Shown here: one piece after another, positions 827 to 8,000 of the stretch
How positions within the stretch are numbered: position 1 is the stretch's first letter
Layout of the letters: every line of letters begins with the position of its first letter
NCBI RefSeq assembly: GCF_002571385.2
Contig: NW_019217873.1
Coordinates: 87,354-151,353, forward strand
Direction: 5' to 3'
DNA: 64,000 nt
Origin: Stylophora pistillata
Taxonomy: Eukaryota
The notes under the pieces: generated by a model
What the model saw: only the letters and a program-made list of their open reading frames with translations
What the model was told of the DNA's origin: nothing
Databases searched by the model: none
Program-made: the position numbers and the translations under genes

Positions 827-3800
827 ATCAACACGATCACCATATTGTTGATAAAGTGCATCACCAGCTTGTTGCATCTGATGTGCAAGTCTTGTCAGTT
901 CAGGGTTTTGAGTTGGAACAGGCTCAGGTTGAGGTAAAACTACATTGCTGGAACTTTTTTCAGCACCTTCACTGTCTGTTACTAAGTCATCTTCATCTGC
1001 TTCATCACATTCACAAGGACCTGAAAAGGTTAAGCGATAAAATGAAAACTCTTTCAATTGTAACATCTAATGTGAAATTTCCCCTTATATCTACTAAAAC
1101 TCTCCTTAAAAATTTAATCACAATAAGAGAATAAGTGTGCTATCAAGATAATATCTTCTGACATGTGTGTTCACTGGCATGTTTGTCCACTTGCATCAGC
1201 TGTTTACCAGATGAAGGTCTGAAATAATATTCTGGAGAGGGATACATGTAAACCACTTCTAGGTGTTGCAGGGTCAACCAAACTGTCTGTAGCTACCACA
1301 CTGTGAAATTTAGTTTTACATAAAGTGCAATTTGCTCACTTCAGATTAAAAAAGACTCCAACATTTGTTTTACTCAGAGATGTGCCTATGTCTATGAGTA
1401 ATAATGATGCACTAATAATACTACAATTCATGTAATACTACAAATCAGGGGTGTTTTCTATCATCTTTTACTGTTCAGTCATATTTTACTTTAGTGAAGG
1501 CAGTGACGCACTTGGAGATTTTACTCTCTGATCACCAAGAATTTGAACAGCATCAAATATCACCAATATCTGACATGCCAGATTTTGCCAATTATATATT
1601 ACCTATTGAGACAACCAGTGAAAATCACAACCAAGCATACCTAGCAATTTTTGCTGATTGCTAATGTGTCACTGCTTTAAACACTTTTAAACACTTGTCT
1701 TAAACAAGTCATAGTGTTTTAATGTTATAAGAAACGATCCTAGGAAGCTGTCCTTTTATTTTTCAAAGCAAAATTTTTTAAATATGAATTTGTTAGGCAG
1801 TAAAGATCACCAATATCTGACAAACCAAATATTGCTGATTTTATATGCTGATTAAAGCAATCAGTGAAAATCACTTAATTTGGATATATCAACATAGTTG
1901 AAATGGTAAATTGGCCACTGTAACGATTACAAAAGCTGACGTTTCGAGCGTTAGCCCTTCGTCGGAGCAAATAGTGAAAATCGCAGCCAAGCATACCTGG
2001 CAATTTTTGCCTATCACTGCAATCCCCATCCAAAATTGACAAGAATGTCACCACTTTAAGCACTTTCAGTCCTAGCTTTCATTTTTGAAAGCCAATTTTT
2101 TTTGTCAAACAAATCTGATTGGCAGCAAAAATTACCAACATCTGACATGCCTGATGTCATGGTTCTTGCCAATTGCAACAATTAGTGTATATAGAAGTTT
2201 GTTGCCGCTGTAAGCTATTTTAGCCCTTCTCCTGAACATGTCCTAGTCGTTTGCTAGGGGAAAAATCTTGGAAAGGTGTGCTTTCATATTTTTTAATATT
2301 AGGGCCAACTGGAGTTTTCTGGAGGTTTTAACTTATCTTAAACAAAGGCCACCACTTTAAATAGGTGGTTAAAAATCTTAAATGCATTTGAACTAAATTG
2401 AAACCTTCTAATCTACAAGTAGTCTGATGTGGCAATTGGCAAATACAATAAGTCATAATGTATGCATATTGTACACAGAACTAAACAATAGTTCTTACAG
2501 GACCATATTAAGTCGCGTAAACCTACCCAGTTCAAGGAGAGAACAATAACCAATTTCTACATACAACATAAATATAAGGTGAAGCACAAAGGTAGTGAGG
2601 ATTTAAATGACAATATGAGCTTAATGACATTGGGAATTCATGCAGAGATCATGCAATTCAGCATTTTGGCAAAACTTCCTTGTTTTCCTAGAAACATTAT
2701 TTTTAGAACAGGGAAAAATTTTTCTGCCTGACTTTATATTTAGAAGAGTAATTGGTTTACCTTCCTCATTCCTGGTGTTCCATTGAAATACAGCCAAACT
2801 ATATTGGTTCTTTAACAAAACGATTTTTCACTAGATTCTTTAGAGCATATGCAAGATTCACAGAAAAGGAGGTACATGCTGATACCTTATTAACATTCCC
2901 TGTTCTTTCAACAAACAAATCTGTTACATTCTCTCAAAGAATTGAACTCTAGGGCTAGAAATTACGTGATACCAGCCTAACCAAATATTAGAGATTATGG
3001 GATCTAAGTTTGAGTAGATGCCCTGCAATCACGAACCGGTCAAACAAAGCACATATCATGCACTGCCATCAGTTCGAGTTTTATGCACTATGCACATGCA
3101 CAGAAGATCATTAGTTACAAAATATAAATGTACCGGTCTTCAATTCAAAGGATAATGAAGAAAGAGGATATTAGACTTGGACATGCAGAAACAGTAGTAG
3201 TAGTAGTAGAATCTTTATTTATACACGATAAGAATTAAAGCTAAAAAGCTTGTGGGGTCGTGCACTTAACAAAATAGTATCTAGTCAACTTATGATTATA
3301 CTAAGACACATTTAAAACTAAATAAGAAACTATAATTGCCAATTGCCACAATTAGTGTATATAAACTAAATAAGAAACACAGACATATTGACTGTCACCA
3401 CCACGGGAAAGACGCAAGTTCTCTAAAAAACTTCCTTTGCTACGACAGGATTACAGACTATTGGTCATGCTGAGCGAACCACGAGTGACTGACGCCAATT
3501 GCAAGAGGCTGAAGGGGGCCGTTAACACGAAAACAATCGCGCCATGTAAATTGTGCAAATATCTACAGAACTTGACAAAAGTGCTAATCATTCTACTAAG
3601 CATGATTCAATCGAGTCCTATCTAGAGTAGAAGCAAATAAATTCGATATCTAGGGCAAGACTTTTGAAAACAATTAGTAAATTACCTCGAGACTGTTTGT
3701 AATTGTAATGGCCCGTTTCCTCTTGGATGATCGGAGAATCCGCTGCTTCTTTGGATGATTTTTTAAGCATTGACTTGGTATTTGATGAGTGAGGCAGTCT

Positions 3801-3917
3801 TAAAAATTCCTCGAAAAGCAAGCACGCTTGTTTCTCGATATCCTCTAAACTCTCTTCACAGCTTTCCACAGGAGTTCGCTGAGATTTCAGATCAAAATAA
3901 GGCATGCCCTCTGCCAT
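827..3917 (-). CDS. Bcl-2-family BH3-containing protein (BID-like or BAK-like), 5' two exons; the 3' part is not identified and probably lies left of the window
   Basis: Exon 1 is 3917-3686 (ATG, donor G|gtaatt, phase 1). Exon 2 is 1020-827 (acceptor ttttcag|GT, donor GAT|gtgagt, phase 0); the phases match. The protein has a helix-1/BH4-like segment EDIEKQACLLFEEFLR, an acidic loop DEADEDDLVTD|SEG and a BH3-like motif LTRLAHQMQQAGDALYQQY. Confidence 0.8.
1875..1972 (-). mobile_element. Fragment of the same repeat family, inserted in a local duplication
   Basis: Matches 10143-10235 and is flanked on both sides by agtgaaaatc (possible target-site duplication). Confidence 0.6.
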
Positions 3918-5093: not shown

Positions 5094-8000
5094 ATGGAGC
5101 AAGACCCGGTAGAACAAACATACATTTTACAAGGAACACCTGAGGTTACTACAGATACAGATTCTGACAAAGAAATGGAGAACAGTGGCCCCCAAAAATC
5201 AAACATTGATCGTTGGGCTTCACTCGAACGAATCCGGGAAGAAACTCGTATTGTAGTATTAGACTATCTAGGTTCGTTACCAGCAGATAGGCTGACTGCT
5301 AGGAACTTTACAAATTCTGAGAACAGGGTACCATGTCTTAAAAGAGCGATAAGTGGCCTATCCAAGAGTGCCAGCGATGCTGGCGCTTACGAATCCAAGA
5401 GAAAAAAATTTTTGGAAATGGCAAGATTACAGCGAAAGTTATCTTTGAACTTGAAGAGAGACATTGAAACATTTGACCATAACAAACTCCGAGCAAGAGC
5501 AGAAAAGAAAGTGTAAGTTATCCGTTTTGTTTTTATGTTTTAATGATAAGTCTATAAAGCAGTATTTTTCATTTTAAAAACTGTCTGCAGCTGTTTTTTA
5601 ACTTGACGTTTTTGGGGTTCAAATGTTTCCTGGTTAGACTCGACGATTTCTAGTCACTGATAGTCCTTGGGCTTTTAAATACAACTAGAGCAGCTCTAGT
5701 TATCAACCAAGAAAGGGATAAATACACGTATTTTTGGAACTTCGATCGTGGCGTATACATGTATTTTATATGCAGCAGACTCCACAAAATCGCACAATTC
5801 GTGTTTTCAAAGAGGTCGATAGGGCTCTCAGCTATCGTACGAAATTTCAAGAAGAGTAAGAATATTATTAAGCCCACTGAATCTTGCACTGCATATTTAG
5901 AGGGAAATGGTTTTTCATTTGTGTAGGATTGTGATTTTCAAACTACCTCTTTGCAAATCAATCGAGCCGGCATTTAATTAATAGCTCAGAACTATGGCAA
6001 GATTTCATTATGCATACAATTCTTGGATAAAACTGGAAAACAGGGGCAAAACAACAGATTATCTTTGGGACTTCGGCTTTGTTTTTGATTGGTATGGGGT
6101 TATACGGAAATCTGTCCATTGCTTTTTCTGACGTTTTTTCAAAGAGCGTATCCTACGTGCCGCCTCCAAGGGTGATGATTAATAGGGTTGTGGACTTTGT
6201 GGTTTGAAAATGTCTGGTAATTAATAGATAACTTACTTACAATGTGAAGTGAGTTAGTCACCTTGGGATTTACGTCTTAACATGCAAGTCACAAGATATG
6301 GATTTGTAAGATTCTAAAATTTATTTATTCCACATTTTGGTGACGATTAGCCTTTCCTCAGTTGCTGGGAGATTCGAAAGGTTTACATGAAATAAAAAGC
6401 CATGCATGGCTGAGAAAATGATAAAAAATTAATACTCTAAAGCTCTATCAATCCCTCAGAAGGCAATTTTTTTGCCATCTAGGTATCTTTACAAAGAATG
6501 GGTGCAATTGTTCAGTGTCATTTACTGGTTAGTAACCATAACCCTTGGTCAGAGATTGGATTGTGTATCCACCATATTGAATGAAGAGTTTTAATGTATA
6601 CTATACACATAGCAACAGAAAAACAACTTGCAATTTGTTAATTTTTCCACAGTTGAATTCAATTTACCTGAAATTTCAAAATTGTTGGAAAGTTGGGAGG
6701 GTATGAATGGGAGTCCAGCCAGAGTCACATTCTCTCATATGGCGTGCACATACATGATTGTCTCCCCCACTTCCTCTACTCTTGCTGGGGGTTTTGCATT
6801 CAAGCTATTAACTTCTACTGTGTCAGATGTAATGGCCAACCTTATTTGTCTATTATGAATTGATATTTTTATCCTTTATTTTGCAACTGAACATGGGAAC
6901 AACAGCTTTTTAAAATTATTAGAACCTCATATGGAAATAATTTGGAATTGTATAACAATCCTTCTGTAACCTTACAGAAATAGATCTTTCTGTTGAGCGT
7001 TATCATTCTTTTGTAAATTGGCTTGCATAATAACAAATTAAACCATAATTTCAATAAACGGTGACATGTATATTAAGAGCCACTGACCATGAATGTAGAG
7101 AATCAGCCAACAGTTGCAAAATCTCATTAATTCATTTTATTTTTCAGTAAGGACCCTTTTGATGAACCTTTTTCAAAATATTATTTAAAAGTTGTATGGC
7201 CCTTTGCTTTGGCCAAAAAATCACAAAATGCAAAATATACCCAGATTGCTATAATTTGTTTCCCCCATAAAACAATGAAAAATTGTGCAACCTCAGCAAC
7301 TTTGTACCCCACAAGGCAAAACCTTTTTTTAAATTTTTTGTGCTAGCAGATGGTCCAGATCGCATTGTATTTTTGGCCATTTTAGCCCAGACTCTCTTCA
7401 AGCTGGATGTGCTGCCTATGGCAGGCCAGGAAAGAAACTTTGAGGAAGTAAACTGCAAGGATAAAAGTTAAAGATGATGTATATTTTGATTGGTAAATAC
7501 ATATAATACCAGATCATTTTTTACAGGCCTTTAAATAGGCCATGACAGCTGTTAAGTGGTTTGCATTGCATTTTTGTCGTAATTGTCCACACTCTTTTCA
7601 ACCTGGACTGGTTACCTATGACGAGCCAAGATAGAGAATCTCTTCTGCTTTCTTCTTGAAGCCTGTCTTGCAGACCAACTGACTTCCTAAGACTTGATAG
7701 TGTTTCGAAGGTCATTGGCTCAATAACAAAAAATATAAGTGTTCTTAGTTTGCTTTTAGCTACATAAGACGTGCCAGGAGATTTTTCAGTTTTACTAATG
7801 TAACAACTTACAGGAAAAACACTGGGAATAATAATTATCTGGCTAAGCTGCAAGCTGATTATTCACAACTTTATACTTTGTGGCAAAGGTAATAAAATTG
7901 AAAGTCATTATATCAGGGACGATTTCAGAATACTTGGCATGTTTAGCATAAATGCCTGACTAGTTTTAGAGTTTTAGTGACATGAGAGATGGACTGCACA

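What the first reader, a model, noticed from the sequence alone, without database searches (positions are those of the whole stretch)
3686..5512. Head-to-head pair: BH3 gene and BCL2L13 share a ~1.2-kb divergent region
Seen: the two ATGs (3917 on -, 5094 on +) are 1176 nt apart. Established: BID and BCL2L13 are immediate neighbours in mammals, although convergent rather than divergent. Inference: the adjacency is independent support for BID orthology and a very old two-gene apoptosis/mitophagy module, possibly co-regulated.
Basis: partly seen in the sequence, partly recalled or inferred. Interest (0 to 1): 0.75.

Follow-up and report, generated by a model that had tools for sequence, protein, structure and literature searches.

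The report
Coral BCL2L13 beside tail-less BH3 gene
In the coral Stylophora pistillata, the BCL2L13 cell-death gene sits head-to-head with an unannotated BID/BFK-like BH3 gene, inside a small gene block that humans also keep next to BCL2L13 and BID, so this pairing is probably very old.

Summary
Two first coding exons face away from each other, with ATGs at 3917 (-) and 5094 (+) and 1176 nt between them. RNA reads confirm both exons, their splice joints, and about 0.8-0.95 kb of untranscribed spacer.

The plus gene (349 aa, 3 coding exons) is the coral BCL2L13/Bcl-rambo type. The minus gene is LOC111326707 (233 aa, 4 exons, two of them left of the window). It is a single-copy, Pfam-negative, tail-less Bcl-2-superfamily protein. 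It has an invariant BH3, an acidic loop with a conserved DxVxD site, BH1/BH2 remnants, and the family's hallmark intron after the BH2 'GG' residue.

BID orthology is not shown by sequence. Pfam BID matched 1 of 13 family members, below threshold. Pfam Bcl-2 matched 10 of 13, also below threshold. The language-model search ranked BCL-G and BID highest.

The position argument became stronger. The genome's only V-ATPase subunit E gene and a mitochondrial carrier lie directly beside the pair, as SLC25A18-ATP6V1E1-BCL2L13-BID do in humans.

Against a fixed shared promoter: Orbicella has no minus-gene exon within 3.9 kb upstream of its BCL2L13. Co-regulation is untested.

The parts
3686..3917 (-). 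Minus gene (LOC111326707) exon 1, coding part: residues 1-77 plus the first base of codon 78. It carries the conserved N-terminal helix region (ESLEDIEKQAxLLFEEFLRLP).
   Evidence: Translation. Donor AG|GTAAT. Joint to exon 2 in 4 of 4 runs. Identical in layout to database protein P0001.
3918..4150 (-). Minus gene 5' UTR. The transcript start lies at roughly window 4070-4150.
   Evidence: depth with the first mate on + is 40.7/53.8 in L005 4201-4400, 9.8/32 in 4401-4600 and 0 beyond. X24 molecule ends pile up at L005 4522 (window 4072).
1021..3685 (-). Minus gene intron 1 (2665 nt, GT..AG).
   Evidence: table 5: skips 2665, ends CT..AC on the + strand, cut +2.
827..1020 (-). Minus gene exon 2: acidic loop plus BH3 (residues 78-142).
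   Evidence: reading frame. RNA contig X5 record 12 covers L005 1276-1472. Matches P0001.
974..997 (-). Acidic loop DEDDLVTD, with the conserved D89-x-V91-x-D93 followed by S/C/N. This is a candidate caspase-type cleavage site.
   Evidence: E81, E84, A85, D89, V91 and D93 are invariant in 13 of 13 full-length family members. Cleavage itself is inferred, not tested.
851..898 (-). BH3 motif LTRLAHQMQQAGDALY (residues 119-134).
   Evidence: L122, A123, M126, Q127, Q128, A129, G130, D131 and A132 are invariant in 13 of 13. It aligns to the BH3 of Bcl-2/Bcl-xL.
4151..4950 (.). Untranscribed spacer between the two transcript starts. It is the presumed promoter region of both genes.
   Evidence: table 2: depth is 0 in X21 and X24 for L005 4801-5400 and at most 0.43 for 4601-4800. 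The sequence is unique in the genome, with no repeats and no RNA family.
5026..5093 (+). Plus gene 5' UTR. The transcript start lies within window 4951-5026.
   Evidence: first-mate-on-minus depth begins in the bin L005 5401-5600. RNA contig X1 record 8 starts at L005 5476 (window 5026).
5094..5512 (+). Plus gene (BCL2L13 type) exon 1, coding part: residues 1-139 plus two bases. It contains the N-terminal E-T-x-x-V-L motif region.
   Evidence: E60, T61, V65 and L66 are invariant across 7 cnidarian and hemichordate relatives.
10705..11116 (+). Plus gene exon 2: BH3-BH1-BH2, ending ...KKGGW directly before the intron.
   Evidence: Pfam Bcl-2 PF00452 at 46.7 bits against a cut-off of 31.4. Acceptor and donor. 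The RNA loose end matches its first 30 bases.
11383..11601 (+). Plus gene exon 3: acidic linker, hydrophobic C-terminal tail (YGVAAAAVGIGVCYSLL) and stop codon.
   Evidence: The same GGW|AAF join and tail appear in the spliced database relatives P0055 and P0103.

Best explanation
This is a real divergent gene pair in Stylophora pistillata. The plus gene is the coral BCL2L13/Bcl-rambo orthologue, a tail-anchored Bcl-2-domain protein of 349 aa. The minus gene (LOC111326707, 233 aa) encodes a soluble, tail-less and very divergent member of the Bcl-2 superfamily. Its layout is an N-terminal helix, an acidic loop with a conserved DxVxD site, an invariant BH3, a remnant of BH1 (R-N-W), and a BH2-like QQAGG(I/M/V) followed at once by the family's hallmark intron. 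It most likely works as BID and BFK do. It would sit as a latent globular protein until a caspase cuts the loop, which frees the BH3 helix to engage Bax/Bak-type or pro-survival Bcl-2 proteins at mitochondria (inferred, not tested). The pair lies in a 28-kb block with the V-ATPase subunit E gene and a mitochondrial carrier gene. Humans keep the same set next to BCL2L13 and BID on 22q11.21. The block therefore very probably predates the cnidarian-bilaterian split, and the minus gene is the positional counterpart of BID. Whether it is the orthologue of BID alone, or of the wider BID/BFK/BCL-G group, is open. The two genes start about 0.8-0.95 kb apart, so they may share promoter elements, but that is not shown.
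For: Gene models. The joints and transcript limits come from 2 raw-read RNA runs and 2 contig runs. Database protein P0001 is 233 aa and 99% identical over exon 3. Its cluster holds XP_022786498.1 of S. pistillata on a contig of 805,741 bases, which is the length of C90.

Plus gene. Pfam Bcl-2 scores 46.7 bits. The full-library search gave only 35 hits. The named ones among the 8 long hits looked up were 'bcl-2-like protein 13' of Ptychodera, a Bcl-2-domain protein of Potamilus, a Hydra record named 'myosin-G heavy chain', and uncharacterised proteins of Saccoglossus and Hydractinia. A later search added Nematostella and Orbicella. The coral Bcl-RAMBO clusters with vertebrate Bcl2L13 in Moya 2016 (passages). 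The genome has 12 Bcl-2-domain loci, 11 of them distinct, and this one is the outlier.

Minus gene. The BH3 and loop residues are invariant in 13 of 13 members at 46-70% overall identity. Pfam Bcl-2 gives colinear sub-threshold matches in 10 of 13 (best E 6.4e-4). A profile against the PDB lists Bcl-2/Bcl-xL/Bcl-w first, aligned from BH3 to BH2 (E 0.2-2). P0094 alone gives the same result. hhalign against the BCL2L13 family gives E 6.2e-5 and 64.7% probability over 102 columns. The exon ends right after GGI, where Bcl-2 genes end after GGW (passage of PMC8998228). There is no membrane tail: the last exon codes 9 residues. The atlas look-alikes are BCL2L14 at 0.95 (10 hits) and BID at 0.93 (5 hits).

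Synteny. Both PF01991 matches in the genome lie at C90:70758-75195. A Mito_carr gene lies at C90:76387-80284. The human gene order is given in a passage of PMC11472575. BFK and BID share the 'caspase site before BH3, no tail' design (passages of PMC8814693).
Against: Neither Pfam family reaches its cut-off. BID scores 15.5 bits against 25, in 1 of 13 members. Bcl-2 scores at best 20.7 bits against 31.4.

No BID or BFK chain is among the 41 PDB hits or the 60 shown of 94.

Two word-limited searches found relatives only in sequences that look scleractinian. Named members come from Stylophora and Montipora only.

A 2022 survey states that Bid first appears in cartilaginous fishes and is absent from hagfish and lamprey (passages of PMC8998228).

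In Orbicella faveolata contigs L017 and L018, the 3.9 kb upstream of BCL2L13 holds no minus-gene exon.

Gene order and orientation differ from human (divergent here, convergent there).

Four other families of the human block are not on this contig: bMERB/MICAL, TMEM121 and Pex26 lie elsewhere, and A_deaminase_N gave no match.

The carrier's glutamate-carrier identity rests on my recollection alone. The atlas said only 'mitochondrial carrier'.

The tree cannot place the family: its stem branch is 2.72 changes per column and BCL2L13 monophyly without it has 29/0 support.
Confidence: 0.6

Rival explanations
1. The minus gene is a fast-evolving Bcl-2 paralogue that arose within corals, perhaps as an old inverted local copy of BCL2L13. 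Its adjacency to BCL2L13 resembles the vertebrate BID-BCL2L13 pair only by coincidence. Under this view the conserved block concerns BCL2L13, ATP6V1E and the carrier, not this gene.
For: Relatives were found only among coral-like sequences. The literature places Bid's origin in jawed vertebrates. The sequence lies closer to Bcl-2/Bcl-xL than to BID. hhalign links it to the BCL2L13 family, and in the tree it joins at the base of that family. The Orbicella contigs lack it within 3.9 kb.
Against: It is present in both deep coral lineages at 42-70% identity, with invariant motifs. It is equally remote (4.5 bits or less) from every Bcl-2 exon of its own genome, including its neighbour. The searches that found only corals need shared 5-residue words, so they cannot see distant kin. 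A tail-less BH3 gene next to BCL2L13 inside an otherwise shared block would have to arise twice.
Confidence: 0.25
2. The minus gene is the counterpart of BCL-G (BCL2L14) or BFK (BCL2L15), the BH3+BH2 tail-less proteins, rather than of BID. It may not be pro-apoptotic at all.
For: The atlas ranks BCL2L14 clusters first (0.95; 10 hits in one set and 9 in another) ahead of BID (0.93; 5 hits). The protein keeps a BH2-like GG motif and its intron, as BFK and BCL-G keep BH2 while BID does not (passages). Mouse work questions BCL-G's killing activity (title and listing).
Against: The atlas gives no alignment or E-value, and the recognition score (2034) is below the level that most known families reach. 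In humans, BID is the gene that lies beside BCL2L13. BCL2L14 lies on chromosome 12.
Confidence: 0.1
3. The two genes are merely neighbours with separate promoters. The 1.2-kb region has no shared regulatory role.
For: The spacer is not conserved at DNA level with the Orbicella upstream region, where only the exons match. Orbicella has no partner exon within 3.9 kb. Depth ratios differ between the two raw-read runs: exon 1 about 41 against 5 in X21 and about 54 against 10 in X24.
Against: The transcript starts are under 1 kb apart with nothing transcribed between them, which is the usual definition of a bidirectional promoter. Two runs cannot test co-expression either way.
Confidence: 0.5

Closest known systems
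[quoted passage not shown]
   Same: Soluble, with no membrane tail. An N-terminal helix is followed by a flexible acidic loop with an Asp-ending site, then the BH3. The size is similar. It is the immediate neighbour of BCL2L13 in a block that also holds ATP6V1E and an SLC25 carrier.
   Different: The Pfam BID model is not met. The coral protein keeps an N-W remnant of BH1 and a GG BH2-like motif with the Bcl-2 intron, which BID lacks (passage). It is divergent to BCL2L13 rather than convergent, and lies on its other side.
BFK (BCL2L15) and BCL-G (BCL2L14): tail-less BH3+BH2 proteins
   Same: BH3 plus BH2 with a degenerate or missing BH1, and no transmembrane helix. BFK has a caspase site in the loop before the BH3 and is proposed to act like BID (passages of PMC8814693 and PMC10244440). 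These are the best language-model look-alikes.
   Different: No alignment-based match was obtained: BFK chain 7CCL is not among the PDB hits. In humans these genes are not next to BCL2L13.
BCL2L13 / Bcl-rambo, including AmBcl-RAMBO of Acropora millepora
   Same: The plus gene has a Bcl-2 domain with BH3-BH1-BH2, the GGW intron, an N-terminal motif shared with proteins named bcl-2-like 13 in hemichordates, and a C-terminal hydrophobic tail.
   Different: Only 72 residues separate BH2 from the C-terminus, against the long BHNo domain of the 485-aa human protein (passage). I saw no conserved LIR-type motif. No vertebrate sequence was compared directly.
Human 22q11.21 cat-eye-region block CECR2-SLC25A18-ATP6V1E1-BCL2L13-BID-MICAL3
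   Same: A V-ATPase E gene, a mitochondrial carrier, BCL2L13 and a tail-less BH3 gene lie together: 28 kb in the coral and consecutive genes in humans.
   Different: Order and orientations differ. The CECR2 neighbour was not looked for. MICAL, PEX26 and TMEM121 homologues lie on other contigs. The carrier's subfamily is untested.
Bidirectional promoters of animal genes
   Same: Divergent transcript starts are under 1 kb apart with no transcription between them.
   Different: No evidence of shared elements or co-expression. The spacing is not kept in Orbicella.

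Membership tests
BID (Pfam PF06393) | Score at or above the family's curated cut-off (25 bits) | tested here: not met
   1 of 13 family members matched at E <= 10: P0094, 15.5 bits, E 0.013, residues 63-197 against profile 49-185 of 191. The Stylophora protein itself gave no BID match.
BID | BH3 helix preceded by a protease-sensitive loop, and no transmembrane tail | tested here: met
   The BH3 and the DxVxD loop are invariant in 13 of 13. The last exon codes 9 residues and there is no hydrophobic tail. Actual cleavage cannot be tested here.
BID | BH3-only: no recognisable BH1 or BH2 | tested here: not met
   R176-N177-W178 aligns to the NWGR motif of BH1, and QQAGG to the GGW of BH2 in Bcl-2/Bcl-xL. 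W178, G222 and G223 are invariant.
BID | Positional orthology: neighbour of BCL2L13 in the ATP6V1E1/SLC25A18 block | tested here: met
   for the coral. A passage of PMC11472575 gives the human order. Other animal genomes could not be examined (closed).
Bcl-2 family (Pfam PF00452), minus gene | Score at or above the cut-off (31.4 bits) | tested here: not met
   10 of 13 members match below the cut-off. The best is 20.7 bits, E 6.4e-4, colinear over profile 1-99 of 100. P0001 itself gave no Bcl-2 match.
Bcl-2 family, minus gene | Conserved intron directly after the BH2 'GGW' residue | tested here: met
   Exon 3 ends ...QQAGGI|gtaagt. All 12 Bcl-2-domain exons of this genome end at ...GGW followed by read-through of a GT donor. 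The rule is stated in PMC8998228.
Bcl-2 family, minus gene | Bcl-2 fold (helical bundle around a central hairpin) | not testable with these tools
BCL2L13 / Bcl-rambo, plus gene | Bcl-2 domain above the cut-off plus a C-terminal tail anchor | tested here: met
   PF00452 scores 46.7 bits and 46.3 bits in the genome scan. A hydrophobic C-terminus lies in exon 3. Membrane insertion itself was not tested.
BCL2L13 / Bcl-rambo, plus gene | Closest relatives outside Cnidaria are BCL2L13 rather than other Bcl-2 types | tested here: inconclusive
   Only 35 hits in 1.84 billion representatives. Among those looked up, Ptychodera proteins are named bcl-2-like 13 (E 5.6e-4) and the others are unnamed. No vertebrate protein appeared. 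The support from Moya 2016 was read as passages only.
BCL2L13 / Bcl-rambo, plus gene | Long BHNo domain with a LIR motif (mitophagy receptor) | tested here: not met
   The linker is short (72 residues from BH2 to the end). I saw no W/F/Y-x-x-L/I/V motif conserved between the window protein and P0055 (by eye).
Bidirectional promoter pair | Divergent transcript starts under 1 kb apart | tested here: met
   The minus start is at about 4072-4150 and the plus start at about 4951-5026. Bin resolution is 200 nt and no cap-selected data were used.
Bidirectional promoter pair | Co-regulation of the two genes | not tested
Conserved microsynteny block with human 22q11.21 | Single-copy marker genes of the block lie beside the pair | tested here: met
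   Both PF01991 matches of the genome lie on C90 at 70758-75195 (confirmed at 39.7 and 31.3 bits). The block from there to the BCL2L13 stop spans 28.2 kb.
Conserved microsynteny block with human 22q11.21 | The carrier is of the SLC25A18/22 (glutamate carrier) type | tested here: inconclusive
   Pfam Mito_carr scores 69.8 bits. The atlas names only 'mitochondrial carrier'. Exact look-ups found nothing. There is one weak paralogue in the genome. The subfamily assignment is my recollection.

The most novel reading that the evidence does not exclude
The coral gene is the undivided ancestor-type of the vertebrate tail-less BH3 proteins BID, BCL-G (BCL2L14) and BFK (BCL2L15). On this reading, a caspase-activated BH3 protein was born by local duplication of a BCL2L13-like gene and already sat beside BCL2L13, ATP6V1E and a mitochondrial carrier in the cnidarian-bilaterian ancestor. 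BID would then be a Bcl-2-fold gene that later lost BH1 and BH2, not a vertebrate invention. The link from death-receptor caspases to mitochondria would be as old as the Eumetazoa. The same window also holds TEAD and a histidine-phosphatase gene that looks like TIGAR to me. By my recollection, their human counterparts TEAD4 and TIGAR lie on 12p13 with BCL2L14, which would fit BID and BCL2L14 as duplicates from the vertebrate genome doublings.
Probability: 0.3. Interest if true: 0.8.

Novelty: new member of a known kind. Interest (0 to 1): 0.62.

Why it matters
Published surveys place the origin of BID in jawed vertebrates. They list only intron-less, disordered BH3-only candidates in cnidarians (passages of PMC8998228). 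Coral studies had to use a frog tBid to trigger death in their assays (Moya 2016).

An unannotated coral gene has BID/BFK architecture and sits in the same four-gene neighbourhood as human BID. That gives a concrete candidate for the missing link between caspases and mitochondria in corals, where apoptosis control bears on bleaching and stress tolerance. It also gives a testable route for how BID arose from a Bcl-2-fold gene.

My searches of the held literature found no paper that describes this gene family, this coral-human block, or a BID-BCL2L13 pairing outside vertebrates. Supplementary tables of those papers were closed and may list the locus.

Tried and rejected
1. A first exon-4 model used an upstream acceptor and gave a hydrophobic, tail-anchor-like end. 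I rejected it because the RNA loose end at L005 12 continues into the later acceptor and P0001 ends with 9 residues after GGI.

2. Pfam on single exons of the minus gene gave nothing. PDB phmmer on exon 3 gave nothing. On P0001 it gave only chance-level MRT4 hits at E 0.7-1.2.

3. 'Recent duplicate of the neighbour' is rejected. The family profile scores 4.5 bits or less against all 12 Bcl-2-domain exons of this genome, and the gene is single-copy.

4. The tree of the BH3-to-BH2 core (27 rows, 102 columns) used 10 of the 11 canonical exons (L011 dropped as identical to L010) plus the window's own BCL2L13 exon, 8 of 13 minus-family rows, and 8 plus-family rows. It is uninformative on the family's origin. 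With three groups, the 96/94 branch only says that the canonical set is one group. The program itself warned of long-branch joins.

5. Naming the carrier failed. The atlas gave a generic answer and exact look-ups missed.

6. Extending the human block failed. bMERB/MICAL, TMEM121 and Pex26 homologues lie on other contigs, and A_deaminase_N gave no match, though its control also rang nowhere.

7. Other corals. The metagenome scan gave 5 loci. Only 2 (L017 and L018, Orbicella, near-identical) have enough upstream DNA, and they lack the minus gene. L019, L020 and L021 have under 1 kb upstream and are uninformative. Two contig lengths (1,255,589 and 958,779) are shared by minus-family and plus-family fragments in ENA assemblies. 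This suggests, but does not prove, the same contigs in another coral.

8. The spacer has no Rfam match better than E = 1, no repeats and no second copy in the genome.

9. Earlier notes of this scan by words: nothing found.

Full report
**Source and coordinates.** The window is G000:C90:87354-151353. The minus gene's protein cluster contains XP_022786498.1, 'uncharacterized protein LOC111326707 [Stylophora pistillata]', on a contig of 805,741 bases, which is the length of C90. The genome is therefore the stony coral Stylophora pistillata.

**The observation.** The minus-strand ATG ends at 3917 and the plus-strand ATG starts at 5094, with 1176 bases between them.

I laid two raw-read RNA runs (X21, X24) and two contig runs (X1, X5) on C90:86904-92903, where window coordinate = L005 - 450.
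- The minus exon 1 -> exon 2 joint (intron at window 1021-3685, GT..AG) is seen in all four runs.
- Coverage on the minus gene's strand reaches about window 4072-4150.
- There is essentially no coverage from 4151 to 4950.
- Coverage on the other strand begins between 4951 and 5026.
- An RNA contig leaves plus exon 1 at 5512/5513 and continues with the first 30 letters of the exon at 10705.

The finding's limits, 3686 and 5512, are thus exactly the outer ends of the two first coding exons. The spacer is unique in the genome and has no repeats and no RNA-family match better than E = 1.

**The plus gene.** It has three coding exons: 5094-5512, 10705-11116 and 11383-11601, coding 349 residues.
- Exon 2 carries a Pfam Bcl-2 domain (46.7 bits against a cut-off of 31.4) and ends in GGW directly before the intron.
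- Exon 3 ends in a hydrophobic tail.
- Exon 2 found only 35 proteins at E <= 0.001 among 1.84 billion representatives, so this is a distinct subfamily.
- I looked up 8 long hits. Two Ptychodera proteins are named 'bcl-2-like protein 13'. A Potamilus protein is a 'Bcl-2 homology region 1-3 domain-containing protein'. Saccoglossus and Hydractinia proteins are uncharacterised. A Hydra protein carries an unrelated name. Three (P0018, P0027, P0035) are unnamed Logan sequences.
- A profile of seven such proteins (A3) also found Orbicella, Nematostella and Paramuricea proteins.
- The N-terminal E-T-x-x-x-V-L motif, the W of BH1 and the GGW of BH2 are invariant across these cnidarian and hemichordate sequences.
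- Moya et al. 2016 (passages read) report a coral Bcl-RAMBO that groups with vertebrate Bcl2L13.
- This genome has 12 Bcl-2-domain loci, two of them identical, and this locus is the low-scoring outlier.

I accept the BCL2L13 assignment, with one reservation: no vertebrate sequence was compared here. The coral protein also has only a short linker where the human protein has its long BHNo domain (passage).

**The minus gene.**
- Exon 1 is at 3917-3686 and exon 2 at 1020-827.
- Exons 3 and 4 lie left of the window, at L003 9808-9563 and 9137-9108, which is window -192..-437 and -863..-892.
- My first guess for exon 4 gave a hydrophobic tail. The RNA loose end and the database protein P0001 both showed a 9-residue end instead. 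P0001 is 233 aa and comes from RNA contigs of many runs.
- The gene is single-copy.
- Thirteen full-length relatives were collected. Their identity to the Stylophora protein is 46-70%. Named members are from Stylophora and Montipora only.

Across all 13 relatives the following are invariant:
- an N-terminal helix region;
- E81, E84, A85, D89, V91 and D93 in the acidic loop (DxVxD followed by S, C or N);
- the BH3 core L122-A-x-x-M-Q-Q-A-G-D-A132;
- W178;
- A221-G-G223.

**What family is it?**
- Pfam gives no hit above threshold.
- The Bcl-2 model matches 10 of 13 members below threshold, colinear over the whole model (best 20.7 bits, E 6.4e-4).
- The BID model matches 1 of 13 (Montipora P0094, 15.5 bits, E 0.013, colinear over profile positions 49-185 of 191).
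- A profile of the family against all PDB sequences lists Bcl-2, Bcl-xL and Bcl-w chains first (E 0.2-2), aligned from BH3 through the NW of BH1 to the GG of BH2. No BID or BFK chain is listed.
- P0094 alone behaves the same way.
- hhalign against the BCL2L13 family gives E 6.2e-5 and 64.7% probability over 102 columns.
- Exon 3 ends directly after GGI. All 12 Bcl-2-domain exons of this genome end after GGW, and the literature describes this as the family's conserved exon boundary (passage).
- The protein-language-model atlas ranks BCL2L14/BCL-G clusters first (0.95) and BID second (0.93), with a recognition score below that of most known families.

Together these results show a very divergent, tail-less member of the Bcl-2 superfamily that keeps BH3, a trace of BH1, and BH2. 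This is the design of BFK and BCL-G. With the caspase-type loop before the BH3, it is also the design shared by BFK and BID (passages).

**Is it a recent duplicate?** No. The family profile scores 4.5 bits or less against each of the 12 Bcl-2-domain exons of this genome, its neighbour included. A tree of the BH3-to-BH2 core puts the family on a very long branch at the unresolved base of the BCL2L13 group. It cannot decide between sister, nested or independent positions.

**The neighbourhood.** This is the new evidence.
- Just beyond the minus gene's 3' end lies a mitochondrial-carrier gene on the minus strand at C90 ~76387-80284. Its last exon scores 69.8 bits on Pfam Mito_carr, and the genome holds only one weak paralogue of that exon.
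- Next to it lies the V-ATPase subunit E gene on the plus strand.
- The only two PF01991 matches in the 398-Mb genome are at C90:70758-70874 and 75103-75195.

The order is therefore V-ATPase E (+), carrier (-), BH3 gene (-), BCL2L13 (+), all within 28.2 kb. A clinical paper lists the human genes in order as CECR2, SLC25A18, ATP6V1E1, BCL2L13, BID, MICAL3, PEX26 (passage of PMC11472575; also PMC7862319).

A single-copy gene falling within about 25 kb of another in 398 Mb has a chance of roughly 1 in 10,000 by my arithmetic. The linkage of ATP6V1E with BCL2L13 is therefore inherited, not accidental. A tail-less BH3 gene sits beside BCL2L13 in both species.

Limits of this argument:
- The carrier's glutamate-carrier identity is only my recollection (searches did not settle it).
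- Order and orientations differ from human.
- Homologues of MICAL, TMEM121 and PEX26 are on other contigs, and the ADA2 N-domain gave no match.

**Other species.**
- One metagenome scan gave five coral contigs.
- Two near-identical Orbicella faveolata contigs (P0103 100% identical) carry BCL2L13 exons 1 and 2 with 3.9 kb upstream, and that stretch has no trace of the minus gene at protein or DNA level.
- The other three contigs are too short upstream to say anything.
- Minus-family and plus-family fragments share two contig lengths in ENA assemblies of another coral. This hints at linkage there.

So the 1.2-kb head-to-head spacing is not a fixed feature of corals. Adjacency beyond Stylophora remains to be shown.

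**Literature.** A 2022 survey states that Bid first appears in cartilaginous fishes, is absent from hagfish and lamprey, and that cnidarian BH3-only candidates lack introns (passages of PMC8998228). I found no paper describing this coral family, the coral-human block, or BID-BCL2L13 pairing outside vertebrates (listings). Supplements were closed and might list the locus among Stylophora Bcl-2 genes.

**Verdict.**
- The BCL2L13 call is sound.
- 'BH3 gene' is right, but 'BID orthologue' overstates what the sequence shows.
- Co-regulation and a mitophagy link are untested.

Noticed in passing
window 55528-57972 (-): An 815-residue open frame made of about 30 near-identical units of the form ...RPQSITRFGRSADGNPTN.... 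This looks like a large RFamide-type neuropeptide precursor, with -RFG followed by basic residues. The Pfam hits to it (Transketolase_C_1, DUF6117; no single stretch passes) look like repeat artefacts.
   Followed up: no
window 110-237, about 1750-2150, and L005 401-800 / 2201-2600: A short repeat of about 125 nt has at least 55 copies across the genome at 93-100% identity. It shows very high RNA depth on both strands and many 'opposite strands' or 'goes back' joints between its copies inside the minus gene's introns. This looks like a MITE-like inverted-repeat element and is not part of either gene.
   Followed up: partly
window 34028-34510 (+), 21914-22786 (+), 29105-29824 (+), 13983-15623 (+): Other genes in the window: a histidine-phosphatase exon (His_Phos_1, 29.9 bits) that reminds me of TIGAR, two paralogous ORFs with sub-threshold WH1 matches, and an intron-less RING + NHL-repeat protein of 547 aa.
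   Followed up: partly
G000:C90:308540-308839 and C90:423211-423510; G000:C7:721596-721895: Two further canonical Bcl-2 family genes lie on the same contig, 0.2-0.3 Mb from the pair. The C90:308 kb exon is identical in protein to one on contig C7, which is either a duplicate or an uncollapsed haplotype.
   Followed up: no
window 3880-4894 (L005 4330-5344): Run X1, whose 'RNA' label is only a guess, holds a 1013-base contig across the otherwise silent spacer at depth 414, with 25 base differences and 12 gap letters. It could be a divergent allele, a sister species, or DNA in that run. The two raw-read RNA runs and the polyA run show nothing there.
   Followed up: no
   Followed up: no
window 4536-4545: The silent spacer holds a palindromic E-box, GTCACGTGGT. 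By recollection it resembles the CLEAR/USF-type element of lysosome and autophagy genes. A single occurrence has no statistical weight.
   Followed up: no
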